A stretch of DNA of 64,000 nt from IMGVR_UViG_3300042261_002390:124001-188000, one strand, 5' to 3'; shown: positions 5,228 through 36,553, counted from the stretch's first letter. Notes: a model not told the origin generated them from the letters alone. A program made the numbers and translations.

Positions 5228-5256
5228 AAAAGCGCAATAAGAATTGCGCTTTTTTT
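5228..5256 (+). terminator. Intrinsic terminator
   Basis: AAAAGCGCAAT-aaga-ATTGCGCT-TTTTTT hairpin plus U-tract. Confidence 0.85.
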
Positions 5257-5259
5257 ATC

Positions 5260-14422: not shown

Positions 14423-15436
14423 TTAAATATATTTAAAAAAATATCCTTTAGTGTGATTTCTTTCACCACTAATAACTCTTCTAATACATTTGTCTTTAAT
14501 TTTCATAATATCACATAATTCATGTATATTATTGAAAGTGCGAATGTATTGTTTTGTATTATAGTCAAACATTTCTATTTTACGTAGCTTAGATAATCTA
14601 TTATATGTGCCTTGTCGATATTCTCTTAATGTTTGAAATATTTCATATTTTCTGCTTAGTCTTAATGTTTCAGAATCATAATACATTTCATTTTTTATTA
14701 TATTGAGGTCGTGATATGAATAATAAAAAATTTTTGAGATGTAATTATTACTTGACTGATATACTGTATTAGTTAATTTAGTGTTATTCGATATGTGATA
14801 TCTTAAAAAATCATGTTTAATTTGTTTTAATAATGCCTCCGACCCGATTATCTGAAATCTTAGTCTTCCTTTTTTTTGATTTTTTTCGTTAGTAATTGAC
14901 CCGTCACCATCAAAAACACCTCTAATAAAATGCCAAAAATATTCATTAGGTATATTTGGCATTTCACAGGTGAACGATTTGTTGGGATATATGCCCAATT
15001 TATTTAAATCATCAACAATTTCTTTAGATGCTATTTGTAATGAATATCTAGTATATGTTTTATTTGTTCTTTTATCAAAAATATCGTATTTGGCTAATTT
15101 ATGTTCAGACTTGAGTTCTCGTTTAAATATTTCAACAAGCTCACTGTCTTTAGATGTAAAAGTTAATTTAAATTTATTAACATATCCGTCAGATATGATT
15201 AATCCTAGTATGTAAGCTTTATTTTTATTGTTGATTTCTTTAAAAAAATTTATATCAATGCTGTGTTTTCTATTATTGCCGTCGTGAGATTTATTATCTA
15301 ACGTATATCCATATTTTTTCAACCGATTTCCGATTGTTGATGGTGATACGTCACCAATTAAGTTAGCTATTTTATTTAATGAGTATTTATCTTTAAAATA
15401 ATAATTAAATATTTGTTCTATGTTTATGTTTTTCAT
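14423..15436 (-). CDS. Free-standing LAGLIDADG homing endonuclease with HTH/NUMOD1-like domains
   Basis: AYILGLIISDG and HFIRGVFDGDGSI motifs, NUMOD1-like C-terminus (IRTFNNIHE...TKGYFFKY), own minus-strand GTATTTAT at 15455-15462. Confidence 0.9.
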   Translation of the reverse strand: MKNINIEQIFNYYFKDKYSLNKIANLIGDVSPSTIGNRLKKYGYTLDNKSHDGNNRKHSIDINFFKEINNKNKAYILGLIISDGYVNKFKLTFTSKDSELVEIFKRELKSEHKLAKYDIFDKRTNKTYTRYSLQIASKEIVDDLNKLGIYPNKSFTCEMPNIPNEYFWHFIRGVFDGDGSITNEKNQKKGRLRFQIIGSEALLKQIKHDFLRYHISNNTKLTNTVYQSSNNYISKIFYYSYHDLNIIKNEMYYDSETLRLSRKYEIFQTLREYRQGTYNRLSKLRKIEMFDYNTKQYIRTFNNIHELCDIMKIKDKCIRRVISGERNHTKGYFFKYI

Positions 15437-21231: not shown

Positions 21232-21630
21232 ATGGTATCATATAATATTAATTTTCCTTTAAGGGATGATGTTTCAACAAATACATTTTTTTTAACCACT
21301 AAAGTTACTAAAGATGCATTTAGTTCCGATTTATTGTTATTGTTGCTCACTCAAAGGGGTGAAAGATATTATGAACCAGACTATGGAACAAATTTATTGA
21401 AATATATTTTTGAGCCGAATGATAACATTACAGCAACTGATGTTGAGCAAGAGATAAAAAGAACCGTATCGTTATATATTCCAGCACTTACTATCAATAA
21501 AGTGTCATTTAATTGGAATTTCGACGATAACGGTAAGCCAATATCAGACAACCAATTAAATGTAAATATTATGTTCACATATACTGAAGATGCATTTAGC
21601 GAAACTGGTTCATTAGATTTAAATTTTTAA
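21232..21630 (+). CDS. Baseplate wedge subunit, T4 gp25/GPW-like
   Basis: LLLLLTQRGERYYEPDYGTNLLKYIFEP signature. GTATTTATA at 21208. Confidence 0.9.
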   Translation: MVSYNINFPLRDDVSTNTFFLTTKVTKDAFSSDLLLLLLTQRGERYYEPDYGTNLLKYIFEPNDNITATDVEQEIKRTVSLYIPALTINKVSFNWNFDDNGKPISDNQLNVNIMFTYTEDAFSETGSLDLNF

Positions 21631-23491: not shown

Positions 23492-24687
23492 TGGAAGTTA
23501 TAAAAAAAACTATATTACAAGCGTTAATTACAGGTACTACTATTGTGAGTGGTGTCACAAAATATGTTATCATACCTAATCCGGATGCTGTTTATCATAT
23601 GAAAATTGGATTGGACTCAAATTCTGAAGATATTGGTTTTTTTGATGTAATTACTGATTATGTGAGTGGTAGTACAACAACCACAACCAGTACAACAACC
23701 AGTACCAGTACAACTACCACAACTAGTACAACAACCAGTACCAGTACAACTACCACTAATTCACCTAGCTGTAATTTGAACATGACATTAAATATTGGTG
23801 ATGAAAATCTAAATTGGGGTGGTTATTTAGGTAATTACAATAGTAATTATGGTAATATAATTGTTAATTATGGGGATGGAAGTCCATTAGAAACTATAGA
23901 AGCATATGATGATGGAGGAACATGGTTCTATTACATAGAAAAGACTTATGGAAGTACTGGAATATATAATGTATCTATACAACTCCCTATTTGTGACTTA
24001 CCATTTATTAGTTTTGTTAATGCTAATATATCTCAACTAAATATAATAGATTTTCCTAATATTGAGCATTTCGAATTAGTAAATCAATTGGTAGAGTTAA
24101 ACATTCCTGATTTAAACAATTTTAAATCTTTAAAACACTTCTACTTAAATGGTGGTGTATATGAAACTACAGATTTTACAGTATTGCCTTTACTAGAAGA
24201 ATTAAGTATTGGAAGTTCGGATATTACTGGTTTAAATATTAATAATATGGGTTCTTTGTTAATGCTTAGTATAACACAATGTACTGGTATAGCGACTATA
24301 GATGTTGCTGGTTTATATAATCTTCTTGATATAGACATAGTAGATACGCCCATATCTATAAATAATCTTAATGAGTTGACATCAATAACAATTCTACGTT
24401 TAGAGAATGTTAATATGTCTAATATAGACTTAAGTGTAATTCCTTCTCTTGAAATATTCATAGTAGTGAATGGAACGTCTTTTACTGATGTTTTTGATTT
24501 TTCACAATCTCCAAATTTGTATCAAATAGCAATATCTAGTACATCTTTAACTGCGGGAGAAATTGAAACATCCATCTATTCTGTTTATGATAGAACATCA
24601 TTAACACAGGGAAGTGTGTCATTTGCAGAATTCCCATATACACCAACAATACTTAGTTATTTAGCATCCGTAAATTGGACAATATAA
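23491..24687 (+). CDS. Virion structural protein with Thr/Ser linker, PKD-like and LRR-like domains
   Basis: Baseplate operon. ~30-residue T/S tract, VNYGDGS...TYGSTGIYNVSI (PKD-like), repeated LxxLxxLxI units. Confidence 0.7.
   Translation: MEVIKKTILQALITGTTIVSGVTKYVIIPNPDAVYHMKIGLDSNSEDIGFFDVITDYVSGSTTTTTSTTTSTSTTTTTSTTTSTSTTTTNSPSCNLNMTLNIGDENLNWGGYLGNYNSNYGNIIVNYGDGSPLETIEAYDDGGTWFYYIEKTYGSTGIYNVSIQLPICDLPFISFVNANISQLNIIDFPNIEHFELVNQLVELNIPDLNNFKSLKHFYLNGGVYETTDFTVLPLLEELSIGSSDITGLNINNMGSLLMLSITQCTGIATIDVAGLYNLLDIDIVDTPISINNLNELTSITILRLENVNMSNIDLSVIPSLEIFIVVNGTSFTDVFDFSQSPNLYQIAISSTSLTAGEIETSIYSVYDRTSLTQGSVSFAEFPYTPTILSYLASVNWTI
23671..23757 (+). repeat. Thr/Ser-coding tandem repeat (36-nt unit duplicated at 23689-23724 and 23725-23757)
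   Basis: AGTACAACAACCAGTACCAGTACAACTACCAC(AACT) x2. Confidence 0.9.
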
Positions 24688-26076: not shown

Positions 26077-26109
26077 GAAAAATCCCGATGTAAAATATTG
26101 GGATTTTTC
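26077..26109 (+). terminator. Intrinsic terminator
   Basis: GAAAAATCCCGAT...ATTGGGATTTTTC. Confidence 0.7.
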
Positions 26110-26143: not shown

Positions 26144-29100
26144 GTGGCAAAAGTTAAAGTTATAAATAACAATCTCGACCAAAATTTAAACGGGAACACA
26201 TTCACTAACGTACCATCTGAAACAATATTTTCATTTGGTAAATTTTCGATTACGTCTAATTTTGATGGACGAAAATATATCAATTATTCTGATACTTTAA
26301 GTTCATTCGTTCGTCCAGTAACATTGGAAAATATAGGCATTTCGGATGTTGAATCAGAAATTATCTATCAGTACAATACCAATGCAGTTTTAAATTTAGA
26401 CAAATCAGATTTAAACACTTTCATTAGATTTGGTTCGGCATATGAATTTTTAAGAGTATGTATTGAGAACATTATCCTTACATATCCCGGAAGTATTTTT
26501 ATGAATTCTCAATTGTCGAGAAATAATAATATAACGTATTTTGATTATATATATGACCCGGTAAGTAATTCATCAACATTTAAGATTCCGATGAATTGTG
26601 TTATGAATACATTTGGGTTGGTTTATAATTATGGGAATAATAGTATTCCAGACAATAACGAGCTTAAGAATCTAAATTTTTCGTATGAGAATTATGTGGT
26701 GTGGACATCAATGAATCCTGATGATAATACTAGTAATGTTATCGGTTTCACTGGAAATACCACAGGGAGAAACTATTTAACACTTACTGTTCATGGTAAT
26801 CCGTTTAGTATGATTACTACTGATTCAGCACCGCTTGATTTTCACATCAAGCCTAATAATTATGTTTTTGAAAAATTTAGGGCGGTCTTAAATGAATTTG
26901 AAAAATATATTGTTTCATCTAGAGTGGGTATGAATGGTTTTGAATTTGTTTTGAAAGACCCGACCTTGTTGGATGATGGTAACATTACATATTCGGATAT
27001 TAAATTATTGTGGAATACGTCAGACAAATATAATATTGACATAAACACACCTAACTATCAGAAATTTTTGGAAATTGTTTTAACTGTTGGGGTAAAATAC
27101 GATAAAATTAAAACAGACTTAATTGCAAGATTTTTAACTCCTTCGTCAATTAAGGCATATGACCTTACAGATGAGGGAAAAATGACTAAATTGCTTAGAA
27201 TTTACGGTAGAGAATTCGACCAAATTCGTGAATTTATTGATTCGTTGGTTTATATTAATAAGGTGACGTATGATAAAGTAAACAATGTCCCCGACCAAGT
27301 TGTAAGAAATTTATCAAGAACATTCGGATGGGATTATTTCTCATTGGTTAATGAAACTGAATTGATTGAAAGTTTTTTAACTGTTGATGAAAATGAGAGA
27401 GATTTGAATTCTGATTTATTGCCTGCTGAGATTGATATTGAATTGTGGAGAAGGATTATCATGAACACCAATTATTTTTGGAAAAGTAAAGGCACTAGAG
27501 AAGCCATTAAATCGATGTTTTTATTAATTGGTATTCCCGAGCCATTTATAAATATTACTGAATATGTGTATACTGTTGATGGAAAGATAAATCCAAATAC
27601 TGTACCGTTTTCAATAAATGATTTCCCAACACAATCATTACCATACGATACTGAAGGTTATCCTAAAGCACCAATCGAAGGTAATAATTATTATTTTCAA
27701 ATATCCGGGGATACTGATAACGGTCAAACATATTTTGACTTATTTAGAAAAGTTGGATTTAATTTGATGAGAACGCCAGATAATAAAAAATCTTGGGTTG
27801 AAAGTGGTGCAACTTATCGAATAGACGATTCAACGCCACAATATTATCAATTGGATAGTAAACTTGTCCTTAATACTAAGGAAGTTGATGTTGCTCTTGA
27901 TACTGCAAGAGGTATTGAGTATGATGTATATAACTATATTCAAAAGGATTATGCAATTAATTCTAGTGGATATACATTGCCATACTCATATGTAAATATA
28001 TCATTAGGCGTTAGTGGTTCACAAAACACATTTCCACTTCCATTAAATTATTCTTCTGAGAAGGTTATGGGCGACCTTGAAGTTCGTTTTAATGGTATAT
28101 TATTAAATGCTCCGAAAACAGGAACAACAACCGGAATCACATACCAAGCTGATTATAGTATTGACGAAGTTAGTAAGACATTTACCATCCTTAATGGAAT
28201 ATATGCTAAAAATAATACGTTGAGAAGGGATGTTATACAAGCTACATTTATTTATTCTGGTGGTACTCATTCACTTTCAGGATTATCAGTAAATTATGTT
28301 GTAACTAGGGTTAAGGCTGATGTAAATGGAACTGTAATACCATTGCCGACATATCCACGTGGTGATGTTCAAGTAACTATTAACGGTATTGCATTAACTA
28401 AAGGTACACCACAATTTATCGCAGATTATACACTCGACCCAAATAATTCAACAGGTAGTACAAATAATCAAATTATTATTCAAAATCCTGAAGTTATTGC
28501 ATATTTACAAATAAATCCCGAAATTCAAATTGCATATGTTGAGGTTGAAGGCAGTAATGATATTTATGCAAGAAGTGAAATTGTTAGAGTAGATAGTTTT
28601 AATTCAAGTAAAATATATTTGAATCAATCTGCAAATAAATATGTTTATAGATTGAATTATAAGGCAAATAATGCTTCTGACATTAAAGTGTTAATTGATG
28701 GGATTGCACTTGAACCAAATACCGATTATTCAATAAATGTACAAAATCTATATGAGGTTTTCTTACCAAGAGGTATAAAATACGGAAGTGTGATAAGCGT
28801 CTATTATCTTGTTGGTGCGAATGCGTTGTTTAACCCGGTGATATCTGATGTATTTGGTATTGGTGATATTAGCAATTTATCGTTTTTAGAATTTATTGAT
28901 TTGATTCAAAAAAGATTGGTTAATAGTAGAAATAGAAAAACAATTAGTGATTTTAAGGGTGGTTGGTATCCTACTTTATTGAGAGTATATACCGAATACT
29001 TGAAACGTGCAACATTGCCGGAAGATAATCCATTGCATTCAAATGGTTACACATTTGCTAATTTATATCCATTCTTAAGTAAATATAATGCATTTTTCCA

Positions 29101-30826
29101 AAGATTTGTTGACCAATTGTTATCAGCAACAATTATCTTACGAAGGGGTGGATTAATGGTCAGAAACAGCGTATTTACTAAACAAAAATTTATGTATAGA
29201 AGAGGCGTTAATTTATATGCCAATAATTCAACAACTACTGACAAAAGAGGAAACCCAATGTATGAATATCTTGGCGATGATGATGTGATTTTTAAAATTG
29301 TACAAGATATATTACCTCCTGAACCACCTAATCCACCAACATTATATGTCGATACTATTACAGGTGGTATTGGTAGTATTATTACTGGTGGTGAGAATAT
29401 TTTAGGTATTGAAGTAATTAATAAATATGGCGTTGATTATAGAAAGTGGAACGGTAGCTCTTGGGATACTTGGGTTCGAATAAGCGAATCAGGAACGCTA
29501 ATTTCTGATAGCTATTCAACAACAATATCTGATGTAACCCCAGATACTATGTATGAGTATCGAGCATTTGTTCAATCACCATATACTGGATACACTGGTC
29601 AATCAAAAACAATTACAACACCAGTAGTAGTACCAGACCCGGAAATATTTACAAAGAATGCTTCGGTAACTCAAACAACATTAGCTAGTGGTGGTGAAAA
29701 TATTGTTCGATATGCTGATGCTGATTATTATGGTATGCAATATAGAGTGCTTTACACAAGTACTTGGACTACAGTTCCAGCACCGTTATTGTCCACACCA
29801 TTGGTTACTAATAATTATGATTATCTTATAACTGGTTTGTCGCCGGAAACAGCATATGAATATCGTGCATATATGACCGTTGATGGCGTTCCATATTATG
29901 GTAATACTAAAACGACAGTAACGTCAGCAATTGCACCGACAATACCAACAGTAATTACTGGTGGTGCTCACGATGTGACTGATATTTGTATGCAAATTGG
30001 CGATAATTACGTTAGTGATAAGGGAAATGCTTGCATCACTGAATATGGCGTATTATACACTCAAAATCCCGCATATAGCTGTGCGTCATGTTTGGTCTAT
30101 GGTAATACACCTACATATGTGTGCAAAAAATCAATATCAAGTGATATTGGGGTGGGAACATGTTATTTCCCCGATGGTGTTCAATCAATTATTAATTTAG
30201 ACCCAAACACTCAAACATATTATAGAGCATATGCCACAAATAGTGTGGGCGTTGGATATGGATGTGTTAATTCTCAAGCTACATGCGTGTCATCAACAGT
30301 TCATACAGTATATTTAAGTGACGGTAATTACAATTCGTGTTCGATTTCAGCAGTTAATTCGTGTGCTAAAATTGTTATTGAGCCACCATTAACCCCGGGA
30401 CAAAGTTTTACATTATCTTACAGTAATAATGCATGCTCGACTACAGATACTGTAACTAGATTAATGTCAACATGCTCTTTTGTTTGTTGTGGTATTAATA
30501 AATTAGATTGTGCCAGTACAAATATCCCAGATAATTATAGTGCTTGTTCGTGTGATGTATCTGATAATAAGGTAGGAACAATAAATATCGACTATGCTAC
30601 TAATTTAAGTGATATTACATTTTATACGATAGCAAATAGTCACACATCGAACGCTTGTTTAGATTATAATAATTGTGCATCGACATGCATTACATCAATA
30701 AGCAATCCTGTTAATGGTACATTCCAAATTTCAGGAGATTTAAACAATCAATATATGTGCATTTATACCGCCAGTAATTTCACCGGAAATGAAAGTGGTG
30801 GTTTTGTACCATTTGAGATTGCATGA
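26144..30826 (+). CDS. Large baseplate/tail protein with FN3-like repeats and Cys-rich C-terminus
   Basis: IWRR-like ELWRRI..N..YFWKSKGTREAI (wedge/P2 gpI-like motif), three FN3-like units (TPDTMYEYRAF, LSPETAYEYRAY, LDPNTQTYYRAYATNSVG). GTG start after GTATTTATA. Confidence 0.8.
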   Translation: MAKVKVINNNLDQNLNGNTFTNVPSETIFSFGKFSITSNFDGRKYINYSDTLSSFVRPVTLENIGISDVESEIIYQYNTNAVLNLDKSDLNTFIRFGSAYEFLRVCIENIILTYPGSIFMNSQLSRNNNITYFDYIYDPVSNSSTFKIPMNCVMNTFGLVYNYGNNSIPDNNELKNLNFSYENYVVWTSMNPDDNTSNVIGFTGNTTGRNYLTLTVHGNPFSMITTDSAPLDFHIKPNNYVFEKFRAVLNEFEKYIVSSRVGMNGFEFVLKDPTLLDDGNITYSDIKLLWNTSDKYNIDINTPNYQKFLEIVLTVGVKYDKIKTDLIARFLTPSSIKAYDLTDEGKMTKLLRIYGREFDQIREFIDSLVYINKVTYDKVNNVPDQVVRNLSRTFGWDYFSLVNETELIESFLTVDENERDLNSDLLPAEIDIELWRRIIMNTNYFWKSKGTREAIKSMFLLIGIPEPFINITEYVYTVDGKINPNTVPFSINDFPTQSLPYDTEGYPKAPIEGNNYYFQISGDTDNGQTYFDLFRKVGFNLMRTPDNKKSWVESGATYRIDDSTPQYYQLDSKLVLNTKEVDVALDTARGIEYDVYNYIQKDYAINSSGYTLPYSYVNISLGVSGSQNTFPLPLNYSSEKVMGDLEVRFNGILLNAPKTGTTTGITYQADYSIDEVSKTFTILNGIYAKNNTLRRDVIQATFIYSGGTHSLSGLSVNYVVTRVKADVNGTVIPLPTYPRGDVQVTINGIALTKGTPQFIADYTLDPNNSTGSTNNQIIIQNPEVIAYLQINPEIQIAYVEVEGSNDIYARSEIVRVDSFNSSKIYLNQSANKYVYRLNYKANNASDIKVLIDGIALEPNTDYSINVQNLYEVFLPRGIKYGSVISVYYLVGANALFNPVISDVFGIGDISNLSFLEFIDLIQKRLVNSRNRKTISDFKGGWYPTLLRVYTEYLKRATLPEDNPLHSNGYTFANLYPFLSKYNAFFQRFVDQLLSATIILRRGGLMVRNSVFTKQKFMYRRGVNLYANNSTTTDKRGNPMYEYLGDDDVIFKIVQDILPPEPPNPPTLYVDTITGGIGSIITGGENILGIEVINKYGVDYRKWNGSSWDTWVRISESGTLISDSYSTTISDVTPDTMYEYRAFVQSPYTGYTGQSKTITTPVVVPDPEIFTKNASVTQTTLASGGENIVRYADADYYGMQYRVLYTSTWTTVPAPLLSTPLVTNNYDYLITGLSPETAYEYRAYMTVDGVPYYGNTKTTVTSAIAPTIPTVITGGAHDVTDICMQIGDNYVSDKGNACITEYGVLYTQNPAYSCASCLVYGNTPTYVCKKSISSDIGVGTCYFPDGVQSIINLDPNTQTYYRAYATNSVGVGYGCVNSQATCVSSTVHTVYLSDGNYNSCSISAVNSCAKIVIEPPLTPGQSFTLSYSNNACSTTDTVTRLMSTCSFVCCGINKLDCASTNIPDNYSACSCDVSDNKVGTINIDYATNLSDITFYTIANSHTSNACLDYNNCASTCITSISNPVNGTFQISGDLNNQYMCIYTASNFTGNESGGFVPFEIA

Positions 30827-30865: not shown

Positions 30866-32665
30866 ATGGCATTTATTGAAAAAGAAAACCCTGTTGTGTT
30901 GAATATAATGTTAACTTCTAAGGGTAGAGAACAATTATCTACTGGAAATTTAACATTCAGTTATTTTGCTATTGGTGATAGTGAAATGGATTATAATTTT
31001 ATTCGAGAAGTTAATGCTGACCCAAATGTTGACCCTAAATACGTGTCGTTTGATTCTAGCATATTAAGACCAAAAGATAAGAATCCTAAAATCATTTCAT
31101 TTGTGCCAAGAAATTTGAGTGGTGACCCATATAATGAGATAGCAACAATATCGCCCATATCATATGATGTGGTAAATACAGCAAACCCAATTGGATTTTT
31201 TAGTGGAAATACTTTTATAATCGATGCATTACATGTTAAGCAGCCGGACATGATGATATACATGAGTGGTGCTACAGGTGGAACATCGTTATCAATACGA
31301 AAAGCACCTACTTTCGGTGCTAGTGGGAATGAACCAGCAATAAATGATTTATTGTTTGTGAAATGGAGTGCTGATGTCGATACTACCGGGCACACAATTA
31401 ATGATAATCTACCAACACCATATTTGATGTATCAAATTGTTGATAAAACGGGTACTTTGGCTGCAAATACATTAAAGGTTATTGTTGATAGAGAACTGCC
31501 TGATTTTAGTGCGTTTTCTCCTTCAAATGTTTCTGGGGCATTGTTATATTATAGTGGTTTAACATCACCTCATCAAATGTCACCCGATTATTTAACAGAA
31601 AGTGTTTTAGATTTTTTTAATAACTACCAATGTACAATTGATGCATATCCTTTTTGGAATATGACAATGGTGTATACTGAAGAATTAGCTGGGATACAAG
31701 CTGCCGATAGAAAATATACTCAATTTAATAGTAGGACATATGGTGGGTTTGTATCATACATTCAAAATCAATCACCAGTATATAAAAAATTGGGTATCAT
31801 ACACTATACAAATAATTCTCCGGCGAATACGTATGGTGAAGAATTTTATTTAAATACACCAACCATAACTATCCCAACAATTATGTGGCATAAAGCAAGT
31901 ACAACTAAATTAGGTGTTAGTTTTAGTGCGATTGGGAATGTTAAATTATTAACTGGCGATACTGTATCATTAAACATTGAATATTATGATTTGGGTGATA
32001 CTGATGGTAATATTATTGGTAAAGTATTCCCGGGACTTAAAATATTTGTCATTGAAGACCAAGAATTGTTGTTTGCTATGTCGTATAAGTCAAATAGGTC
32101 TTGGACACTACCAAATTATTTAGTGGGTGGTGGTAGTGGTATTATTCCTTGCCCAACTACAAGTACAACAACTACAACAACTACGGCAGGTCCTGTTATC
32201 CCGACAACTACTACAACTAGTACAACTACTACAAGCACAACTAGTACAAGTACAACTTCTACTAGTACAAGCACAACTAGTACAACTTCTACAAGTACTA
32301 GTACGACCTCTACAAGTACAACAACAACATTACCACCCGTAAAAACATTGGATGTTGTTAGCGTTGGAACACCTGATACTACATTAGATTATGGTATTAC
32401 ATTATCAAATACTACTGGCTCACCGATAACATTTAGATTACAAATATCGAATGAAACGCAAGCTGCTGGTGTATTCCATAATAGTGGTCAAATTATTGTA
32501 CCTGCTGGTACAGTTAATCAATATTATAGTGGTACGATTACTGGTTTCCCATTCTCTAATGCAAATGGCGATACAATTGATGCTAATTTGAGTGATGATG
32601 ATGGTGTGACATGGACTGCTTCATTTAATTTTGACCCACCATATACTTTGCCATATGGTGCATAA
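30866..32665 (+). CDS. Tail/baseplate protein with tail-collar-like N-terminus and long mucin-like Thr/Ser tract
   Basis: MLTSKGREQL...YFAIGDSE N-terminus, ~55-residue T/S tract, small beta-rich terminal domain. Confidence 0.75.
   Translation: MAFIEKENPVVLNIMLTSKGREQLSTGNLTFSYFAIGDSEMDYNFIREVNADPNVDPKYVSFDSSILRPKDKNPKIISFVPRNLSGDPYNEIATISPISYDVVNTANPIGFFSGNTFIIDALHVKQPDMMIYMSGATGGTSLSIRKAPTFGASGNEPAINDLLFVKWSADVDTTGHTINDNLPTPYLMYQIVDKTGTLAANTLKVIVDRELPDFSAFSPSNVSGALLYYSGLTSPHQMSPDYLTESVLDFFNNYQCTIDAYPFWNMTMVYTEELAGIQAADRKYTQFNSRTYGGFVSYIQNQSPVYKKLGIIHYTNNSPANTYGEEFYLNTPTITIPTIMWHKASTTKLGVSFSAIGNVKLLTGDTVSLNIEYYDLGDTDGNIIGKVFPGLKIFVIEDQELLFAMSYKSNRSWTLPNYLVGGGSGIIPCPTTSTTTTTTTAGPVIPTTTTTSTTTTSTTSTSTTSTSTSTTSTTSTSTSTTSTSTTTTLPPVKTLDVVSVGTPDTTLDYGITLSNTTGSPITFRLQISNETQAAGVFHNSGQIIVPAGTVNQYYSGTITGFPFSNANGDTIDANLSDDDGVTWTASFNFDPPYTLPYGA
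32155..32329 (+). repeat. Low-complexity Thr/Ser-coding repeat
   Basis: Repeated ACTAGTACAA(C/G) units encoding TTSTTTTTTT...TTTTTSTTTTSTTSTSTTSTSTSTTSTTSTSTSTTSTSTTT. Confidence 0.9.
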
Positions 32666-32669
32666 AATC

Positions 32670-32701
32670 CTTGCAAATTAGCTAATTATTTTGTAGTTTT
32701 G
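32670..32701 (+). promoter_or_regulatory. Bacteroidota sigma-type promoter for the glycosylation cassette
   Basis: CTTG-N20-TAGTTTTG, with the ATG only 4 nt downstream. Confidence 0.7.
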
Positions 32702-32705
32702 TATT

Positions 32706-33707
32706 ATGAAAGAATTAAGATTTGTAAGTGCTCAACCTGCTACGGACTATTATGCGTGGCAGGTTGAAGTAATGATTAATAATTTCCTTGAAATGGGAAT
32801 TAATGGAAATTATATCGATATAATTTGTATGATAAATAATAACGTGATTCCCGAAAAATGGTCGAAATTAGCTAATCATTATAATTTTGTTCGTTTCTTT
32901 TTTTATAATGATACTAGAAAATTAAAATTCTATCCATCTTCAACAAGACCAAATGCATTAAAACAACATTGGTTAACAAGACCAGAATTATTAGAGAATC
33001 ATATATTTTATCATGATTGTGATATTGTATTTACTAAGCCAATAGATTGGTCTAAGTTTTTGGATGACGATAATAAATGGTATGGGTCTGATACTCGTTG
33101 GTATATTTCTCATGATTATATCATATCAAAAGGTGAGGATATATTGGATAAAATGTGTGGAATTGTTGATATTGACAAGCAAATTGTAAAAGATAACGAA
33201 TTAAATAGTATTGGCGCACAATATTTAATGAAAGATATTGATTGGCAATTTTGGGATAGGGTTGAGCGTGATTCAGAACGATTATTTAAAGAAATTACCG
33301 ACATTAACAATTACAAAATATTCCTAGATAATCAAAGAATTGCTGATGAAAAAGCTAAAGGCATTAATGGATTACCACCATATCATCCATTACAAATATG
33401 GTGTGCTGACATGTGGGCAGTATTATGGAATGGATGGAAAATGGGTAAAGAAACGATTTGTAGTGAAGAATTACAATTTGCATGGGCAACGTCAGGTGAG
33501 GATGATTGGCATAAATTCAATATTTTTCATAATGCAGGAGTCACTGAAGAAATAAAAGCTACTGCGGAAAAGGAAGGATTATTTTATAAAGCAGATTATA
33601 TGAATAAACTACCATATAATGAAGAATTAAAAATTAAACCCCGCACTACAAGTTTAAAGTATTGGGAAATAATTAAGAAAACCGCAAAAAAATCAGTTTT
33701 ATTGTAA
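32706..33707 (+). CDS. GT-A glycosyltransferase resembling plant peptidyl-serine galactosyltransferase (SERGT1, GT96)/HPAT (GT95)
   Basis: Ordered motifs DYYAWQ, YPSSTRPNAL..HW, IFYHDCDIVF.KP (DxD), WCADMWA. Confidence 0.65.
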   Translation: MKELRFVSAQPATDYYAWQVEVMINNFLEMGINGNYIDIICMINNNVIPEKWSKLANHYNFVRFFFYNDTRKLKFYPSSTRPNALKQHWLTRPELLENHIFYHDCDIVFTKPIDWSKFLDDDNKWYGSDTRWYISHDYIISKGEDILDKMCGIVDIDKQIVKDNELNSIGAQYLMKDIDWQFWDRVERDSERLFKEITDINNYKIFLDNQRIADEKAKGINGLPPYHPLQIWCADMWAVLWNGWKMGKETICSEELQFAWATSGEDDWHKFNIFHNAGVTEEIKATAEKEGLFYKADYMNKLPYNEELKIKPRTTSLKYWEIIKKTAKKSVLL

Positions 33708-33708
33708 T

Positions 33709-34362
33709 ATGGAAAGAATAATACACCAAATTTGGGTTGGTTCTTATGAAATGCCCGAGAGAGAAAAATATTTTATGAAAAGGGTTAAAGAATTAAACCC
33801 TACATTTCAACATATGTTGTGGAATGATAATAATTTACCAAACCTACCTGATAAAATTAAAACACTTTGTGATGCGTTTAGAAAACAAAAAGATTATGCT
33901 CATATTGCTGATGTTTTGAGAATATTCCTCGTTAAAGAGTATGGTGGATTGTATATTGATGTGGATTTTAAACCGATGAAACCATTTACATTGTTTGATA
34001 ACAACAATAACTCAATGTTTGTATGTTATCATGGTGGTAATGATTATACTATGCCTAATGGTGTATTCGGTGGCAAAAAAAATTCAGAACAAGTAAATTT
34101 TATATATGAGTTAGTTGATATTGGAAAAAGTGGATGGTATGGACCTAGTTGGCTGGGTGGTGCAGTAAAACAATATTTAAAACTAGATTATGAAACAAAT
34201 CATGATATAGTTAAAATAAAATGTGCTGAAAACAATATCGATTACTGTTTATTTCCTGAGTTTGAGACATATTTCAAGCATTTAGCATTATATTCTTGGT
34301 CACCGGAAAATAAGAGAAATTTTGAAAATGGAAATATAAATTATTTAGAATGGACGAGATAG
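33709..34362 (+). CDS. Glycosyltransferase family 32 (Och1-like, DxD)
   Basis: RIIHQIWVG, LWND, YAHIADVLR, EYGGLYIDVD. Confidence 0.9.
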   Translation: MERIIHQIWVGSYEMPEREKYFMKRVKELNPTFQHMLWNDNNLPNLPDKIKTLCDAFRKQKDYAHIADVLRIFLVKEYGGLYIDVDFKPMKPFTLFDNNNNSMFVCYHGGNDYTMPNGVFGGKKNSEQVNFIYELVDIGKSGWYGPSWLGGAVKQYLKLDYETNHDIVKIKCAENNIDYCLFPEFETYFKHLALYSWSPENKRNFENGNINYLEWTR

Positions 34363-34970
34363 AAAAGATATTTTCTGGTGATAATCATTTATATGGTAGA
34401 ACCGATATTGATAATTTTAGCGTATCTGGATGTGGGTCTCAAATGGATGACTCCACATTAAACGTTAGAAATAATTTATATCAATTTTTAAATAAACATG
34501 GGATTAATAGTATTGCTGATATACCGTGTGGTGATTACTGGTGGATGAGGCATGTTAAATTATTTGAGATTGAATATATTGGTGGTGATATAATAACACC
34601 ACAAATTCAAAAAATGAAAAAAAACTTTCCATACGTTGATTTTAGAAGAATTGATATTCGATTAGACAAACTACCAACTGTCGATTTATTATTTTGTCGA
34701 GATTGTTTATTTCATTTTAGCTCAGTTGATAAGAAAATGGCATTACATAATTTTATAAATTCAGACATCAAATACATTCTAATGAGTAATCACCCTCTTT
34801 CAAATAAAAATAACGACATTGTTACGGGTGATTTTACACATATTAACTGGCGACTAGAACCGTGGAATTTTGGATTACCGATTGATATATTATATGATAG
34901 TAATGTAGGATATGATACTAAAGAATTACAACTTTACACAAAAAATCAAATTATTGAATTTTTATTATGA
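34350..34970 (+). CDS. Class I SAM-dependent methyltransferase
   Basis: SGCGS, SIADIPCGD..W, YIGGDI, DLLFCRDCLFHF. Confidence 0.88.
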   Translation: MDEIEKIFSGDNHLYGRTDIDNFSVSGCGSQMDDSTLNVRNNLYQFLNKHGINSIADIPCGDYWWMRHVKLFEIEYIGGDIITPQIQKMKKNFPYVDFRRIDIRLDKLPTVDLLFCRDCLFHFSSVDKKMALHNFINSDIKYILMSNHPLSNKNNDIVTGDFTHINWRLEPWNFGLPIDILYDSNVGYDTKELQLYTKNQIIEFLL

Positions 34971-35773
34971 ATAAAAGAGTTAGTTTTGTTTGTACAACAT
35001 ATAGAAGGTTTAGATGTGTTGAAAGAATTTTATTGCAATGCCGGGCACAAACATATCAAAATAAAGAATTGATTATCTTTAACACTGATGTTGAATATCC
35101 AATTACAATTGGATTTGATGATGTAAATATTGTGATTGTTAATAATAATACTGATTATCAAACCGGGAAACCTTATGAAAATAGAGGTCAAATTTGTCGT
35201 GATGCTGTAACACATGCAACAGGTGATTATTTCATGCTTGCAGATGATGATGATATTTATTTGCCTTGGCATCTTCAACAAGCTGTTGAGGGGATTGAAG
35301 AATTAGGTACTGATGCATGGAAACCGCAAAAGAGCTTATTCGCTACAAAGGAAAAGATTGAGTTATGCCAGAATACATTAGAAGCGAGTGTGATTGTTAA
35401 AATGCCTAGAATCAGGCAAATTGGGTTTAGAAGTGATATTACCGGATATGAGGGGTTAAGCTGGTATACTAAATTAAGAGATGAAGGTCAGTTGAATGAA
35501 AACAATTTGAATTATGTCCCATCATATTGTTTTAATTGGAGCGACCCACATGAACTTGCAGGACATAAGCAAAGCGGTGATATTAACAACCCCAATAATT
35601 TTGAAAACCATAAAAATGCCTCAAAGGATGTTGCTACGAAACCGTTGGAAATTAAATGCTTATGTGAATTAAATAATGTGTATGATAAATATTATGACTG
35701 GTTACAATCGAACTCAAATATTTTGAACACCGATTACTATGAAAGATATGTGAGGCAATTTATAACTAATTAA
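34967..35773 (+). CDS. Glycosyltransferase family 2
   Basis: VSFVCTTYRR, QTYQNKELII, ATGDYFMLADDDDIYLPWHL. Confidence 0.9.
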   Translation: MNKRVSFVCTTYRRFRCVERILLQCRAQTYQNKELIIFNTDVEYPITIGFDDVNIVIVNNNTDYQTGKPYENRGQICRDAVTHATGDYFMLADDDDIYLPWHLQQAVEGIEELGTDAWKPQKSLFATKEKIELCQNTLEASVIVKMPRIRQIGFRSDITGYEGLSWYTKLRDEGQLNENNLNYVPSYCFNWSDPHELAGHKQSGDINNPNNFENHKNASKDVATKPLEIKCLCELNNVYDKYYDWLQSNSNILNTDYYERYVRQFITN

Positions 35774-35806
35774 AATTATCAGTATTTATAGTAAATTTGA
35801 TTAACA

Positions 35807-36553
35807 ATGGCAATTGGTTATACAGTATTTACATCATATCTTTTAGAATCATATAGTGGATACAGCACTGCAGTTCACTGTAACTATATTAATTCATTAT
35901 TTTTAGATACAGCATATCCACAAATGCAAGAAGTATCGATTAGCTTTACAAATCCAAATGATTTTAAGTTTCTAAGTAATGATATTAATGCTGGAACTGG
36001 ATTTACTGCAAATAAAATCTATGCACTTATTCAGGTGGTTGATAATTTATTATTTGATAGTGTATCAAATGTTAAACCAACTGCTTCAGGGTGGACTAAA
36101 TATGATATTACTAATCAAATCACCGGGTATGTTTCAGGTAGTTTATTAACTGCAACGGGATTAACAAATCAAGTATTTAAAATTCCGTTACAACATTATT
36201 ATGATGACCCTGCAACATTATTTACTGCATATAACTTACATGACTATATTCAATATCCAACCAAAGAGGCATCTGATGATAATGATTTATGCTTTGGCGA
36301 TGAATTATTTTTCATGGGAAATGTTTCAACACAAATTAAAGCTGTTGCATATACTACTGATTTATCAATCAATTTACCTTTAAATGAATTCAATTCTTCC
36401 ACTAATGCAACATGGAATGAGGATAAGGTTTCAATTACTGAAATCGGCATTTATGACGCTAATAAAAACCTCGTTGCAATCGGAAAATTGAATAATCCAA
36501 TTGAAAAAGATTCAACAATTGCTAGGACTATTGTATTCTCTTTAGATTTCTAA
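35807..36553 (+). CDS. Tail/baseplate protein with tail-collar-like C-terminal motif
   Basis: ITEIGIYDANKNLVAIGKLNNPIEK...VFSLDF. GTATTTATA at 35782. Confidence 0.75.
   Translation: MAIGYTVFTSYLLESYSGYSTAVHCNYINSLFLDTAYPQMQEVSISFTNPNDFKFLSNDINAGTGFTANKIYALIQVVDNLLFDSVSNVKPTASGWTKYDITNQITGYVSGSLLTATGLTNQVFKIPLQHYYDDPATLFTAYNLHDYIQYPTKEASDDNDLCFGDELFFMGNVSTQIKAVAYTTDLSINLPLNEFNSSTNATWNEDKVSITEIGIYDANKNLVAIGKLNNPIEKDSTIARTIVFSLDF

What the first reader, a model, noticed from the sequence alone, without database searches (positions are those of the whole stretch)
30866..36553. Candidate phage-encoded mucin-type protein O-glycosylation system for virion proteins
Seen: a four-gene cassette (32706-35773) sits inside the tail/baseplate module, directly after a structural gene with a ~55-residue Thr/Ser tract. 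A second Thr/Ser tract is in the structural gene at 23491. The cassette encodes a DxD GT-A enzyme, a GT32, a SAM methyltransferase and a GT2. Known: GT32 and GT2 enzymes extend glycans, methyltransferases can cap them, and virion glycosylation is described in some actinobacteriophages. Inferred: initiator + extenders + methyl cap decorate the T/S tracts, giving a mucin-like glycan coat on the baseplate/tail. Possible roles are stiffening linkers, protease shielding, or a glycan lure for a glycan-foraging Bacteroidota host.
Basis: partly seen in the sequence, partly recalled or inferred. Interest (0 to 1): 0.9.

Follow-up and report, generated by a model that had tools for sequence, protein, structure and literature searches.

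The report
Phage sugar-tagging system for poly-threonine tracts
An uncultured jumbo phage carries a four-enzyme cassette next to tail/baseplate proteins with long threonine/serine tracts; its first enzyme belongs to a large unnamed family that sits beside poly-threonine virion proteins in phages of several bacterial phyla, which suggests that phages sugar-coat their particles far more widely than the one known case in mycobacteriophages.

Summary
Both Thr/Ser tracts and all four enzyme genes are at the stated coordinates. ORF 32706-33707 has no Pfam match but folds as a GT8/GT24-like GT-A glycosyltransferase with an invariant DxD (here called "GTx"). It is followed by a GT32, a SAM methyltransferase and a GT2.

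- In 78 related jumbo-phage baseplate modules, S/T runs of 8 or more occur in 15 of 20 loci with GTx and in 1 of 58 without.
- In relatives of Enterococcus phage phiFL1A's major tail protein, 12 of 12 with GTx carry a C-terminal poly-Thr tag and 15 of 15 without GTx lack it.
- In about 30 Bacillota prophages, capsid-sized (~400 aa) and major-tail-protein-sized (~210 aa) proteins end in poly-Thr, with GTx next door.

The conserved core is GTx plus a poly-Thr tract. The GT32 and GT2 travel with GTx in several other phage backbones. The methyltransferase has a homologue in a mycobacteriophage glycosyltransferase/methyltransferase cassette.

Best reading: cytoplasmic O-glycosylation of Thr/Ser linkers in virion proteins, started by GTx, then extended and methylated. 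No biochemistry exists, and the sugar and its biological role are unknown. I found no paper describing this pairing. I rate it a new variant of phage virion glycosylation.

The parts
21232..21630 (+). gp25-like baseplate wedge/sheath-initiator protein (context: start of the baseplate module)
   Evidence: Pfam GPW_gp25 1.1e-11; PHROG 261/43 baseplate wedge
21644..23491 (+). gp6-like baseplate wedge subunit (context)
   Evidence: PHROG 219 baseplate wedge subunit 1.4e-20
23491..24687 (+). 398-aa baseplate-module protein: conserved 55-aa N-terminal domain, Thr/Ser linker, then a weakly LRR-like distal domain. Second predicted acceptor protein.
   Evidence: Translation. The N-domain is conserved in relatives, while GTx-negative relatives have Pro-rich linkers or short tails after it. 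Weak LRR_EndoS hit.
23665..23769 (+). Thr/Ser tract 1 (about 33 residues, 29 unbroken), predicted O-glycosylation acceptor
   Evidence: tandem repeat of period 18/36 at 23671-23756
26144..30826 (+). 1560-aa structural protein with weak FN3-like matches, conserved partner upstream of the 599-aa protein
   Evidence: Weak FN3 hits below the Pfam cut-off; homologue upstream of the 599-aa family in 77 of 78 related loci
30866..32665 (+). 599-aa baseplate-module protein: conserved N-terminal domain (aa 1-~420), Thr/Ser linker, ~110-aa variable distal domain. Main predicted acceptor protein.
   Evidence: Translation. 78 relatives share the N-domain, while the C-terminal extension varies: none, directly attached domains, a Pro/Thr linker, or a poly-T/S linker. 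No Pfam, PHROG or PDB match. The N-domain model was of low confidence.
32156..32329 (+). Thr/Ser tract 2 (about 58 residues, including an unbroken 42-residue run), predicted O-glycosylation acceptor and linker
   Evidence: tandem repeats of period 9-30
32706..33707 (+). GTx: GT-A fold, GT8/GT24-like glycosyltransferase of an unnamed family (PHROG 4417). Predicted initiating protein O-glycosyltransferase for poly-Thr/Ser tracts.
   Evidence: PHROG 4417 4.7e-59. No Pfam or NCBIfam hit. At least 2573 homologues, all unnamed. Model pLDDT 90.8. Foldseek hits to WbbM, UGGT, XXYLT1, glycogenin and LgtC. Invariant DxD and HNAGV motifs. Co-occurrence with tracts.
33709..34362 (+). GT32-type glycosyltransferase (DxD at residues 84-86, inside the sequence YIDVDF), predicted glycan extender
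   Evidence: Pfam Gly_transf_sug 1.9e-13. Found directly after GTx in at least 9 other loci on different phage backbones.
34350..34970 (+). Class I SAM-dependent methyltransferase, predicted sugar O-methyltransferase
   Evidence: PHROG 3382 4.8e-34; Pfam below the cut-off. Homologue (38.6% identity, 1e-18) inside a glycosyltransferase/methyltransferase cassette (three GT genes, two MT genes, one more GT) of Mycobacterium phage prophiGD91-2, and in a cyanophage glycan cluster.
34967..35773 (+). GT2-type glycosyltransferase, predicted glycan extender
   Evidence: Pfam Glycos_transf_2 2.9e-07; weak NCBIfam PglI/WcaA-like hits. 66-78% identical copies 0-1.2 kb downstream of GTx on other phage backbones.
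35807..36553 (+). 248-aa conserved module protein. In relatives without a GT gene at this junction it directly follows the 599-aa family, so the cassette is an insertion between the two.
   Evidence: In relatives lacking a GT gene here its homologue starts within about 100 nt of the stop of the 599-aa family ORF (offsets of 1.3-3.3 kb from that ORF's start, matching its variable length), against 4.9 kb here

Best explanation
This is a phage-encoded system for cytoplasmic O-glycosylation of virion proteins. Its acceptor is a homopolymeric Thr/Ser tract.

GTx (32706-33707) is a soluble, probably metal-dependent and probably retaining GT-A enzyme. I propose it transfers a first sugar from a nucleotide sugar onto the hydroxyls of the poly-Thr/Ser tracts of the 599-aa and 398-aa baseplate-module proteins. 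The GT32 and GT2 enzymes then add further sugars, and the SAM methyltransferase O-methylates the glycan.

The tracts sit exactly at junctions between a conserved particle-attached domain and a variable distal domain. The likely consequence is therefore a stiff, extended, protease-resistant 'bottle-brush' linker that holds the distal domain away from the baseplate and coats the particle with glycan.

Shown here:
- the gene content, the GTx fold and its conserved catalytic motifs;
- the lack of strongly hydrophobic (membrane-like) segments in the four enzymes;
- the location inside a structural gene string;
- the tight evolutionary coupling of GTx with poly-Thr tracts in several phage lineages whose relatives and carriers span Bacillota and Bacteroidota-labelled genomes (plus one phage isolated on an actinobacterium).

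Inferred, not shown:
- that the tract itself is the acceptor and that GTx is the initiator;
- the order of action of the other three enzymes;
- the sugar, the linkage and the biological role.
For: 1. Position. In 76 GTx-anchored viral loci, the gene immediately upstream carries an S/T tract (at least 10 of 12 residues) in 50. The gene immediately downstream carries one in 0 of 71. Nearly all tracts within 10 kb on either side lie upstream on the same strand.

2. Presence and absence within one lineage. In 78 jumbo-phage loci sharing the baseplate module, S/T runs of 8 or more occur in 15 of 20 GTx+ loci and 1 of 58 GTx- loci (Fisher 5e-11, not corrected for relatedness). The single exception is a contig that ends 658 nt after the N-domain. 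On the tree GTx needs at least 8 changes. In 6 independent pairs the tract changes the same way 3-5 times and never the opposite way.

3. A second lineage. Among phiFL1A major-tail-protein relatives, 12 of 12 with GTx have a C-terminal poly-Thr tag and 15 of 15 without GTx lack it. The two states are interleaved at 66% identity.

4. Breadth.
- Staphylococcus SA2, Enterococcus phiFL1A, Clostridium phiCTP1 and Arcanobacterium TPWB06: poly-Thr at the major tail protein C-terminus, directly before GTx.
- Lacticaseibacillus R3.3: a 305-aa protein directly upstream of GTx (unannotated; capsid-like by position) and a 209-aa protein resembling phiFL1A's major tail protein both end in poly-Thr.
- Enterococcus VPE25: a poly-Thr tag on the major tail protein, 2.3 kb away.
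- Lactobacillus LpeD and Chryseobacterium MA9V-3: poly-Thr ORFs upstream.
- 37 of 42 loci in bacterial genomes, including about 30 Bacillota prophages with stereotyped tags at the ends of a ~400-aa, a ~105-aa and a ~210-aa protein (sizes and positions expected of capsid, a small head or neck protein, and major tail protein).

5. Enzyme. Confident GT-A model. Best structural matches include glycosyltransferases that act on proteins or protein-bound sugars: the UGGT catalytic domain, XXYLT1, glycogenin and COLGALT1. D104, D106 and H275-N-A-G-V are invariant down to 28% identity.

6. Minimal system. The 38.7-kb phage phiFL1A has no other annotated glycosyltransferase. GTx alone next to the tagged tail tube protein is therefore the simplest form, which fits an initiator.

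7. Partners. The GTx-GT32-GT2 trio recurs on phage backbones that lack the 599-aa, 1560-aa and 248-aa proteins, with GT2 66-78% identical. The methyltransferase is homologous to one in a mycobacteriophage glycosyltransferase/methyltransferase cassette. Cassettes of that composition are reported to modify capsid and tail tube proteins (PMC11600133, citing Freeman et al. 2023).

8. Linker logic. At the same domain junctions, GTx-negative relatives have Pro/Thr/Ala or PxP linkers, or no extension at all.

9. The four enzymes show no strongly hydrophobic, transmembrane-like segment. No terminator-like site above chance level lies within 30866-36553.
Against: - There is no experimental evidence of glycosylation for any member of this family. 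Everything rests on co-occurrence and fold.
- About a third of the closest GTx loci (26 of 76) have no tract in the adjacent gene. Where enough upstream sequence exists, only short T6-T9 runs in a small protein 2.7-9.4 kb away are seen.
- Two GTx+ loci in the baseplate-module set (L095, L144) have no S/T run of 5 or more. L144 has only interrupted Thr clusters (TTTEPPTTTEAPTTTT) and L095 has none.
- The phylogenetically independent comparison is underpowered (sign test p 0.06-0.25).
- The 599-aa and 398-aa proteins are called structural only from synteny with baseplate genes. The 599-aa N-domain model was of low confidence (pLDDT 59) and had no PDB, Pfam or PHROG match.
- The GT2 Pfam match is short. 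The methyltransferase is below Pfam's cut-off.
- The assignment of initiator versus extender roles is inference.
- My literature search covers only open-access papers and bioRxiv, so a prior description could exist elsewhere.
Confidence: 0.7

Rival explanations
1. The cassette modifies a host envelope glycan (LPS/O-antigen, capsule, or teichoic acid in Gram-positive hosts). This could serve superinfection exclusion or help release. The Thr/Ser tracts would then be ordinary flexible linkers that are unmodified or modified by host enzymes.
For: Phage glycosyltransferases of the GT2 type are classically involved in serotype conversion (general knowledge; Markine-Goriaynoff 2004 as cited in PMC12619734). 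The GT2 gives weak NCBIfam hits to PglI, WcaA, TuaG and EpsE, which act on lipid-linked glycans. Thr/Pro-rich linkers are common in secreted carbohydrate-active proteins.
Against: This does not explain why poly-Thr tracts appear and disappear together with GTx within the same protein families. It does not explain why GTx sits directly after the tagged gene inside structural operons in phages of hosts with very different envelopes, from Bacillota to Bacteroidota-associated. None of the four enzymes has a transmembrane-like hydrophobic segment, and no flippase or polymerase gene is nearby. phiFL1A has GTx as its only glycosyltransferase.
Confidence: 0.08
2. GTx does act on the poly-Thr tract but does not add a simple sugar. 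It might transfer a phospho-sugar or another nucleotide-activated group. Alternatively, GTx is an extender that needs a host enzyme to place the first sugar.
For: The GT-A fold is shared by enzymes with varied donors. The nearest structures include XXYLT1 and the UGGT catalytic domain, which extend existing protein-bound glycans rather than initiate. Elsewhere GTx is often followed by, or fused to, a radical SAM/SPASM enzyme, which hints at unusual chemistry.
Against: The DxD and His motifs are typical of nucleotide-sugar GT8-like enzymes. The minimal GTx-only arrangement occurs in phages of many host genera. That makes dependence on one particular host initiator less likely.
Confidence: 0.12
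3. The glycosyltransferases and methyltransferase modify phage DNA (glycosylated hydroxymethyl bases) to evade restriction.
For: DNA glucosylation is the best-known role of phage glycosyltransferases (PMC12619734; Pyle 2024 as cited there). This jumbo phage has at least one more glycosyltransferase (17389-18771).
Against: GTx is placed in structural modules, not among nucleotide-metabolism genes. It occurs in small temperate siphophages in which no base-hypermodification gene is annotated. It co-varies with a protein feature. No hydroxymethylase is seen next to the cassette.
Confidence: 0.03
4. The association is a by-product of shared ancestry or mobile-module hitch-hiking. GTx and the tract-bearing genes would simply be inherited together, with no enzyme-substrate relation.
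For: Many loci are near-duplicates. The tree-based independent-pair test is not significant on its own.
Against: The tract-bearing proteins are unrelated to each other: tail tube proteins, capsid-sized proteins, baseplate-module proteins and giant 1500-1900-aa proteins. The tract is the only shared feature. Within single protein families the tract is present only when GTx is. The position of GTx relative to the target varies: directly after it, before it, or 2-9 kb away.
Confidence: 0.05

Closest known systems
Mycobacteriophage virion glycosylation (Che8, Corndog/cluster O, Myrna; Freeman et al. 2023, Cell Host Microbe; paper not held, known to me through PMC11600133, PMC12619734 and PMC12894461 and from memory)
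   Same: Phage-encoded tandem glycosyltransferases plus an O-methyltransferase that modify virion proteins. In Bacillota relatives of GTx the predicted acceptors are C-terminal tags on capsid-sized and tail-tube-sized proteins, as in the mycobacteriophages. The window's methyltransferase has a homologue in a mycobacteriophage glycosyltransferase/methyltransferase cassette.
   Different: GTx has no detectable homologue in Mycobacterium phages: 77 phage records matched at E<=1e-5 and none was mycobacterial. The acceptor here is a long homopolymeric Thr/Ser tract, internal to baseplate-module proteins rather than a capsid or tail-tube C-terminus. The cassette sits inside the structural module. 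The likely host phylum differs. Nothing here is shown experimentally.
GT8/GT24 retaining GT-A glycosyltransferases (LgtC, glycogenin, XXYLT1, the UGGT catalytic domain, the WbbM GT domain)
   Same: GT-A fold, DxD motif and a conserved downstream His-containing motif. Several of these act on proteins or protein-bound sugars.
   Different: No sequence-level membership: no Pfam Glyco_transf_8 hit and no PDB sequence hit even with a profile. TM-scores are only 0.3-0.5. A long helical insertion (residues ~180-217) is specific to this family.
Eukaryotic mucin-type O-glycosylation and glycosylated Ser/Thr/Pro linkers of fungal and bacterial cellulases
   Same: Dense Ser/Thr acceptor tracts placed between folded domains. 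The expected physical effect is an extended, protease-resistant linker (established knowledge for mucins and cellulase linkers).
   Different: No GT27 polypeptide GalNAc-transferase and no lectin domain. The enzymes lack signal- or membrane-anchor-like hydrophobic segments, so a cytoplasmic site is likely, not a secretory pathway. The resemblance is functional analogy only.
Serine-rich repeat adhesin glycosylation in Gram-positive cocci (GtfA/GtfB initiation, then GT8-type and other extenders)
   Same: Cytoplasmic O-glycosylation of long Ser/Thr-rich repeat regions by a gene-linked set of glycosyltransferases that includes GT8-fold enzymes (from my own knowledge).
   Different: No GT4 GtfA/B-type initiator is in the cassette. 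The tracts are Thr-dominated rather than Ser-dominated. The targets are virion proteins that are not exported. Not tested beyond Pfam.
General O-glycosylation of Bacteroidota (D-S/T-A/I/L/V/M/T motif, periplasmic)
   Same: O-glycosylation of Ser/Thr in the phylum that may host this phage (from my own knowledge).
   Different: That system acts on exported proteins at a three-residue motif. The tracts here are homopolymeric, lack the Asp-containing motif, and belong to proteins assembled in the cytoplasm.

Membership tests
Actinobacteriophage-type virion glycosylation cassette | Phage-encoded cluster of several glycosyltransferases with an O-methyltransferase | tested here: met
   Three glycosyltransferases plus a SAM methyltransferase at 32706-35773
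Actinobacteriophage-type virion glycosylation cassette | Enzymes homologous to those of the mycobacteriophage cassettes | tested here: inconclusive
   The methyltransferase has a homologue (38.6% identity, 1e-18) in the prophiGD91-2 glycosyltransferase/methyltransferase cassette. GTx has no hit in Mycobacterium phages. GT32 and GT2 were not compared.
Actinobacteriophage-type virion glycosylation cassette | Acceptors are the C-termini of the major capsid and tail tube subunits | tested here: not met
   In the window the tracts are internal linkers of baseplate-module proteins. In Bacillota relatives the poly-Thr tags are at the C-termini of capsid-sized and tail-tube-sized proteins.
Actinobacteriophage-type virion glycosylation cassette | Glycans demonstrated on virion proteins by mass spectrometry or glycostain | not testable with these tools
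   Uncultured phage. No report found for any GTx-carrying phage.
GT8/GT24-like retaining GT-A glycosyltransferases (for GTx) | GT-A nucleotide-sugar-binding fold | tested here: met
   Model pLDDT 90.8. Foldseek probability 1.0 to WbbM, UGGT, XXYLT1, glycogenin and LgtC and to viral GT8 proteins.
GT8/GT24-like retaining GT-A glycosyltransferases (for GTx) | DxD metal/nucleotide-binding motif and a conserved distal His | tested here: met
   D104, D106 and H275 are invariant in 27 close and 13 distant homologues.
GT8/GT24-like retaining GT-A glycosyltransferases (for GTx) | Sequence match to the family's profile (Pfam Glyco_transf_8 or CAZy assignment) | tested here: not met
   No Pfam or NCBIfam hit at E<=0.1. 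No PDB sequence hit with a profile at E<=10.
GT32 (Pfam PF04488, for ORF 33709-34362) | Profile match above the gathering score, with a DxD | tested here: met
   51.3 bits against a cut-off of 23; DxD at residues 84-86, inside the sequence YIDVDF
GT2 (Pfam PF00535, for ORF 34967-35773) | Profile match above the gathering score | tested here: met
   31 bits against a cut-off of 23.3, but only residues 80-117 align. Weak PglI/WcaA-like NCBIfam hits far below their cut-offs.
Class I SAM-dependent methyltransferase (for ORF 34350-34970) | Profile match to a SAM-methyltransferase family | tested here: inconclusive
   Pfam Methyltransf_25 at 19 bits, below the cut-off of 27. PHROG 3382 'methyltransferase' at 4.8e-34. 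Homologues are annotated as class I SAM methyltransferases.
Eukaryotic mucin-type O-glycosylation | GT27 polypeptide GalNAc-transferase initiator with a lectin domain | tested here: not met
   No such Pfam domain in any cassette protein

The most novel reading that the evidence does not exclude
GTx plus a poly-threonine tract is a portable, two-part protein O-glycosylation system: an enzyme and a genetically encodable tag. It would be used by phages associated with at least Bacillota and Bacteroidota hosts to glycosylate capsids, tail tubes and baseplate appendages. Phage virion glycosylation would then be a common feature of tailed phages, not an actinobacteriophage curiosity. This jumbo phage would show an elaborated form, with two extenders and a methyltransferase acting on linker tracts.
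Probability: 0.6. Interest if true: 0.85.

Novelty: new variant of a known kind. Interest (0 to 1): 0.78.

Why it matters
- **Scope of the phenomenon.** Virion glycosylation by phage-encoded enzymes has, to my knowledge, been shown only for a few mycobacteriophages, where it alters antibody recognition. If the GTx/poly-Thr pairing is what it appears to be, glycosylated particles are common among phages of lactic acid bacteria, enterococci, staphylococci, clostridia and bacilli. They would also be common among freshwater phages whose closest GTx relatives lie in Bacteroidota-labelled genomes.
- **Practical consequences.** This would bear on phage therapy (immune recognition, stability, pharmacokinetics) and on dairy phage biology. 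It would also affect how cryo-EM maps and virion mass spectra of these phages are interpreted.
- **Annotation.** It would give a function to a family of more than 2500 proteins that are currently all 'hypothetical' and have no Pfam model.
- **Tool potential.** It would offer a very simple tag-plus-enzyme pair for making O-glycoproteins in bacterial cytoplasm.

Tried and rejected
- **DNA-level search** of the region against 50,697 phage records found only one 167-nt match. It was the Thr-coding repeat of Staphylococcus phage SA2. It was useless as homology but led to the key observation.
- **Profile search of GTx against PDB sequences:** nothing.
- **phmmer of the 599-aa N-domain and the 248-aa protein against PDB:** nothing.
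- **AlphaFold model of the 599-aa N-domain:** pLDDT 59, too poor for fold search, so not searched. The 'structural protein' status therefore rests on synteny.
- **Model coordinates** are not exposed to scripts, so the spatial clustering of D104, D106 and H275 could not be checked.
- **Promoter and terminator scan:** promoter-like sites are only slightly above the shuffle mean (95 found vs 77.1 ± 8.6 expected) and non-specific in this AT-rich DNA, and terminator-like sites are at chance level. The only strong hairpin is at 26077-26109, outside the cassette.
- **Literature:** ten full-text searches found no paper linking poly-Thr tracts to a phage glycosyltransferase. Freeman et al. 2023 is not in the held library.
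- **The ~290-aa protein that follows GTx in 43 of 80 loci:** no Pfam or PHROG match and no similarity to the window's GT2. It is left unexplained.
- **Toxin-family hits for the GT32:** I considered and rejected reading the GT32's weak Pfam/NCBIfam hits to large-toxin glycosyltransferase domains as meaningful. They cover only the ~30-40 residues around the shared DxD motif and lie far below the NCBIfam cut-off.

Full report
**1. What is in the sequence**

The window is part of a 246-kb viral contig, IMGVR_UViG_3300042261_002390. It is about 30% G+C, and nearly all genes are on the + strand up to ~57 kb.

The gene order in and around the finding, all on the + strand, is:
- a gp25-like protein at 21232-21630 (Pfam GPW_gp25, 1.1e-11);
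- a gp6-like baseplate wedge at 21644-23491 (PHROG 219);
- a 398-aa protein at 23491-24687;
- a 154-aa ORF and a 302-aa ORF;
- a 1560-aa protein at 26144-30826, with weak FN3 matches;
- a 599-aa protein at 30866-32665;
- four enzyme genes at 32706-35773;
- a 248-aa protein at 35807-36553.

After that the genes turn to DNA metabolism (RuvC-like, exonuclease, primase).

The 599-aa protein has a ~58-residue Thr/Ser tract that includes an unbroken 42-residue S/T run. The 398-aa protein has a 33-residue tract. These are the only S/T runs of 5 or more in the whole window, and composition predicts 0.0008 runs of 8 or more. Both tracts are encoded by imperfect tandem repeats.

**2. The enzymes**

- ORF 33709-34362 is a GT32 (Pfam Gly_transf_sug, 1.9e-13).
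- ORF 34967-35773 matches GT2 above Pfam's cut-off, although over a short stretch.
- ORF 34350-34970 is a SAM methyltransferase by PHROG 3382 (4.8e-34), but it is below Pfam's cut-off.
- ORF 32706-33707, here called GTx, has no Pfam or NCBIfam match. It belongs to PHROG 4417, 'unknown function'.

GTx has at least 2573 homologues in the protein collection. None carries a name or a Pfam domain.

An AlphaFold model built on 27 homologues is confident (pLDDT 90.8). It is a GT-A fold. Its best PDB neighbours are WbbM, the UGGT catalytic domain, XXYLT1, COLGALT1, glycogenin and LgtC. Among viral models its neighbours are uncharacterised Caudovirales proteins, Lactobacillus phage LP65 Orf49 and viral GT8 enzymes.

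D104-x-D106, H275-N-A-G-V and several other positions are invariant, even in homologues only 28-34% identical from Gram-positive phages.

None of the four enzymes has a hydrophobic segment of transmembrane strength. No terminator-like site above chance level lies between 30866 and 36553. They look like soluble enzymes expressed together with the late structural genes.

**3. The lead from relatives**

tblastn of GTx against 50,697 phage genomes gave 77 records. Nearly all were phages of Lactobacillus, Enterococcus, Staphylococcus, Lactococcus and Clostridium, plus one Chryseobacterium and one Arcanobacterium phage. I inspected ten of them.

In each case a poly-Thr tract lies next to the GTx homologue:
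- SA2, phiFL1A, phiCTP1 and TPWB06: the major tail protein ends in poly-Thr, and GTx is the very next gene, ahead of the tail chaperones and tape measure.
- R3.3: the 305-aa protein directly upstream of GTx (unannotated; capsid-like by position) and a 209-aa protein resembling phiFL1A's major tail protein both end in poly-Thr.
- VPE25: the tagged tail protein is 2.3 kb away.
- LpeD and MA9V-3: two poly-Thr ORFs precede GTx. One LpeD ORF had even been annotated 'glycoprotein' by similarity to a herpesvirus mucin-like protein.

phiFL1A, at 38.7 kb, has no other annotated glycosyltransferase.

**4. Systematic tests of co-occurrence**

*a. GTx-anchored viral loci.* In the 80 closest IMG/VR loci plus three phage-genome loci (58-100% identity for the IMG/VR set):
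- the gene immediately upstream has a tract (at least 10 of 12 S/T) in 50 of 76 loci with enough sequence;
- the gene immediately downstream has one in 0 of 71;
- almost every tract within 10 kb is upstream on the same strand.

The tract-bearing proteins range from 226 to 1963 aa and are mutually unrelated.

*b. The scan found 78 loci with the same baseplate module.
- In relatives without a GT gene at this junction, the 248-aa protein directly follows the 599-aa family. The cassette is therefore an insertion.
- S/T runs of 8 or more occur in 15 of 20 GTx+ loci and in 1 of 58 GTx- loci (Fisher 5e-11; run-density Mann-Whitney 1.3e-8). The one exception is a 5.6-kb contig that ends just past the tract.
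- These counts ignore relatedness. On a tree of the N-domain, GTx needs at least 8 changes. Among 6 independent contrasts the tract changes in the same direction 3-5 times and never in the opposite direction. The sign test cannot reach significance with so few pairs.

*c. Relatives of the phiFL1A major tail protein.* Twelve of 12 with GTx carry the C-terminal poly-Thr tag, and 15 of 15 without GTx lack it. Both states occur among proteins about 66% identical to the query.

*d. Bacterial genomes.* There are 45 loci.
- The closest to the window lie in metagenome-assembled genomes labelled Chitinophagaceae, Flavobacteriaceae, Flavobacteriales, Bacteroidetes and Dysgonomonas. A Rhodobacterales, a Gammaproteobacteria and a deltaproteobacterial bin, and some unclassified bins, also appear among them.
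- The rest are prophages of about 30 Bacillota genera.
- 37 of 42 have an S/T run of 6 or more within 3 kb upstream.
- In the Bacillota prophages a ~400-aa, a ~105-aa and a ~210-aa protein (sizes and positions expected of capsid, a small head or neck protein, and major tail protein) each end in poly-Thr within 1-4 residues of the stop codon.

**5. Anatomy of the acceptors in this phage**

The 599-aa family has a conserved N-terminal domain that ends in ...SYKSNRSWTLPNY. What follows differs between relatives:
- nothing at all;
- a directly attached distal domain;
- a Pro/Thr/Ala linker, as in the closest GTx-negative relative at 70% identity;
- in GTx-positive phages, a pure Thr/Ser tract followed by a distal domain.

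The 398-aa family behaves the same way. A conserved 55-aa N-domain ends in GFFD. In GTx-negative relatives it is followed by PxP-type linkers or short tails. In the window it is followed by the Thr/Ser tract and a weakly LRR-like domain.

The tracts are therefore linkers at domain junctions. Where the enzyme is absent, proline-rich (intrinsically extended) linkers often take their place, and other relatives have no extension or a directly attached domain. This favours a stiffening and protecting role for the predicted glycan. That is inference from analogy with mucins and cellulase linkers.

**6. The rest of the cassette**

- Only one other phage shares all four genes: L092, a 327-kb contig from the same sample, with GTx 58% identical and an 84-residue tract.
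- GTx-GT32-GT2 in the same order recurs in several groups of loci that lack the 599-aa, 1560-aa and 248-aa proteins. There the GT2 is 66-78% identical. These three genes therefore move as a module with tract-bearing genes.
- The methyltransferase has homologues in a glycosyltransferase/methyltransferase cassette (three GT genes, two MT genes, then one more GT) just upstream of the terminase of Mycobacterium phage prophiGD91-2, and in a glycan-synthesis cluster of Synechococcus phage ACG-2014f.
[quoted passage not shown] 2023).
- Elsewhere GTx has other partners: an unknown ~290-aa protein (43 of 80 loci), a small methyltransferase-like protein (25 loci) and a radical SAM/SPASM enzyme (11 loci, and fused to GTx in L095 and L098).

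**7. Interpretation**

The simplest account of all this is an enzyme-substrate pair. GTx recognises poly-Thr(/Ser) and O-glycosylates it in the cytoplasm before or during assembly.
- In small siphophages GTx acts alone on tags at the C-termini of major tail proteins and of proteins in the capsid position.
- In this jumbo phage the same enzyme, with two extenders and a methyltransferase, decorates linkers of two baseplate-module proteins.

I put about 0.85 on a functional coupling between GTx and the tracts. I put about 0.7 on the full statement that it is O-glycosylation of the tracts initiated by GTx. I put about 0.55 on the specific roles of GT32, GT2 and the methyltransferase.

Weak points:
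- There is no biochemistry for any member.
- A third of close GTx loci have no adjacent tract. Only short T6-T9 runs in a small protein 2.7-9.4 kb away are seen where enough sequence is available.
- Two GTx+ module loci have no S/T run of 5 or more. One of them, L095, has no Thr cluster at all.
- The structural nature of the two acceptor proteins rests on synteny alone, because the N-domain model was poor.

**8. Rivals**

- *Host-envelope modification and DNA glycosylation.* Neither explains why a protein feature co-varies with the enzyme within single protein families, in phages whose hosts have very different envelopes. Neither explains the enzyme's fixed place in structural operons.
- *Hitch-hiking without function.* This is unlikely, because the tract is the only thing the diverse neighbouring proteins share.
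- *GTx adds something other than a plain sugar, or extends a host-initiated glycan.* This variant remains open.

**9. Comparison with known systems and novelty**

The closest known system is mycobacteriophage virion glycosylation.
- Same: the cassette composition (glycosyltransferases plus a methyltransferase), the methyltransferase homology, and the capsid/tail-tube-position C-terminal targets in Bacillota relatives.
- Different: the key enzyme family, the homopolymeric acceptor, the internal-linker targets in baseplate-module proteins, and the host range.

GTx works like a GT8/GT24 enzyme but fails sequence-level membership. 'Mucin-type' is an analogy only.

Ten full-text searches of about 8.4 million open papers and preprints found no description of a poly-Thr/glycosyltransferase pairing in phages. 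Subscription literature was not covered.

A paper on freshwater jumbo 'moraphages' predicted to infect Bacteroidota lists four core glycosyltransferase groups and mentions virion glycosylation only as a possibility (PMC12619734). I did not test whether this phage belongs to that lineage.

I rate the finding a new variant of a known kind.

**10. Verdict**

The refinement is that the conserved unit is GTx plus a poly-Thr tract and that it reaches well beyond this phage. The proposed ecological roles remain speculation. The linker role has some comparative support. The 'glycan lure' has none.

Noticed in passing
L098:12548-14539 and L095:11330-13312; separate gene e.g. L025:12001-13035: In some related phages GTx is fused at its C-terminus to a radical SAM/SPASM domain (Pfam Radical_SAM 4e-11, SPASM 2e-07). 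In 11 other loci a separate radical SAM/SPASM gene follows GTx. This suggests further chemistry on the glycan or the tract. L095, one of the fusion carriers, has no Thr/Ser tract nearby.
   Followed up: partly
L081:5117-5930 (Staphylococcus phage SA2) and L165:3164-3926 (Arcanobacterium phage TPWB06): The major tail protein ends in poly-Thr. A short overlapping ORF in another frame continues with a much longer poly-Thr tract plus a C-terminal tail. This looks like a programmed frameshift inside the Thr-coding repeat that would give a long-tagged minor form of the tail tube protein.
   Followed up: no
L146:6409-8880: A relative of the 599-aa protein ends in a HINT (intein-like, Pfam PT-HINT 3.3e-09) domain after Thr-rich linkers and a Gly/Ser stretch. 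This suggests autoproteolytic processing of a baseplate appendage.
   Followed up: partly
window 17389-18771 (+): A further glycosyltransferase (PHROG 7162, 1.5e-34; weak GT-B/Glycos_transf_1 match) lies 2.4 kb upstream of the baseplate genes. I did not test whether it belongs to the same pathway, to DNA modification or to something else.
   Followed up: no
window 14423-15436 (-): A LAGLIDADG-type homing endonuclease with a NUMOD-like DNA-binding tail (Pfam LAGLIDADG_3 1.3e-08). It is one of very few long ORFs on the minus strand within the + strand gene array that fills the first ~57 kb of the window.
   Followed up: partly
window 5244-6545 (+): A TnpB/IS605 OrfB-type protein (Pfam OrfB_IS605 2e-20, Cas12f1-like TNB 4e-23; PHROG 506 5e-118) inside the phage genome, directly before a 1788-aa ORF of unknown function (6584-11950).
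   Followed up: partly
window 12094-13719 (+): A phage-encoded CCA-adding enzyme/poly(A) polymerase family protein (Pfam PolyA_pol 1.3e-20), although ARAGORN finds no tRNA gene in the 64-kb window.
   Followed up: partly
L003:10982-11854 and 42 other loci: A conserved ~290-aa protein with no Pfam or PHROG match follows GTx in 43 of the 80 closest loci. It is the commonest partner of GTx and is completely uncharacterised.
   Followed up: partly
window 26077-26109 (+): A 15-bp-stem hairpin followed by a T-rich tail lies between the 302-aa ORF and the 1560-aa ORF. It is the only strong terminator-like site in the baseplate module, so the 1560-aa gene to the 248-aa gene may form one transcription unit that includes the cassette.
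   Followed up: no
L184-L197 etc. (Bacillota prophages): Besides the ~400-aa (capsid-sized) and ~210-aa (major-tail-protein-sized) proteins, a ~105-aa protein between them also ends in poly-Thr in many Bacillota prophages. This would be a third tagged protein of unknown role.
   Followed up: no
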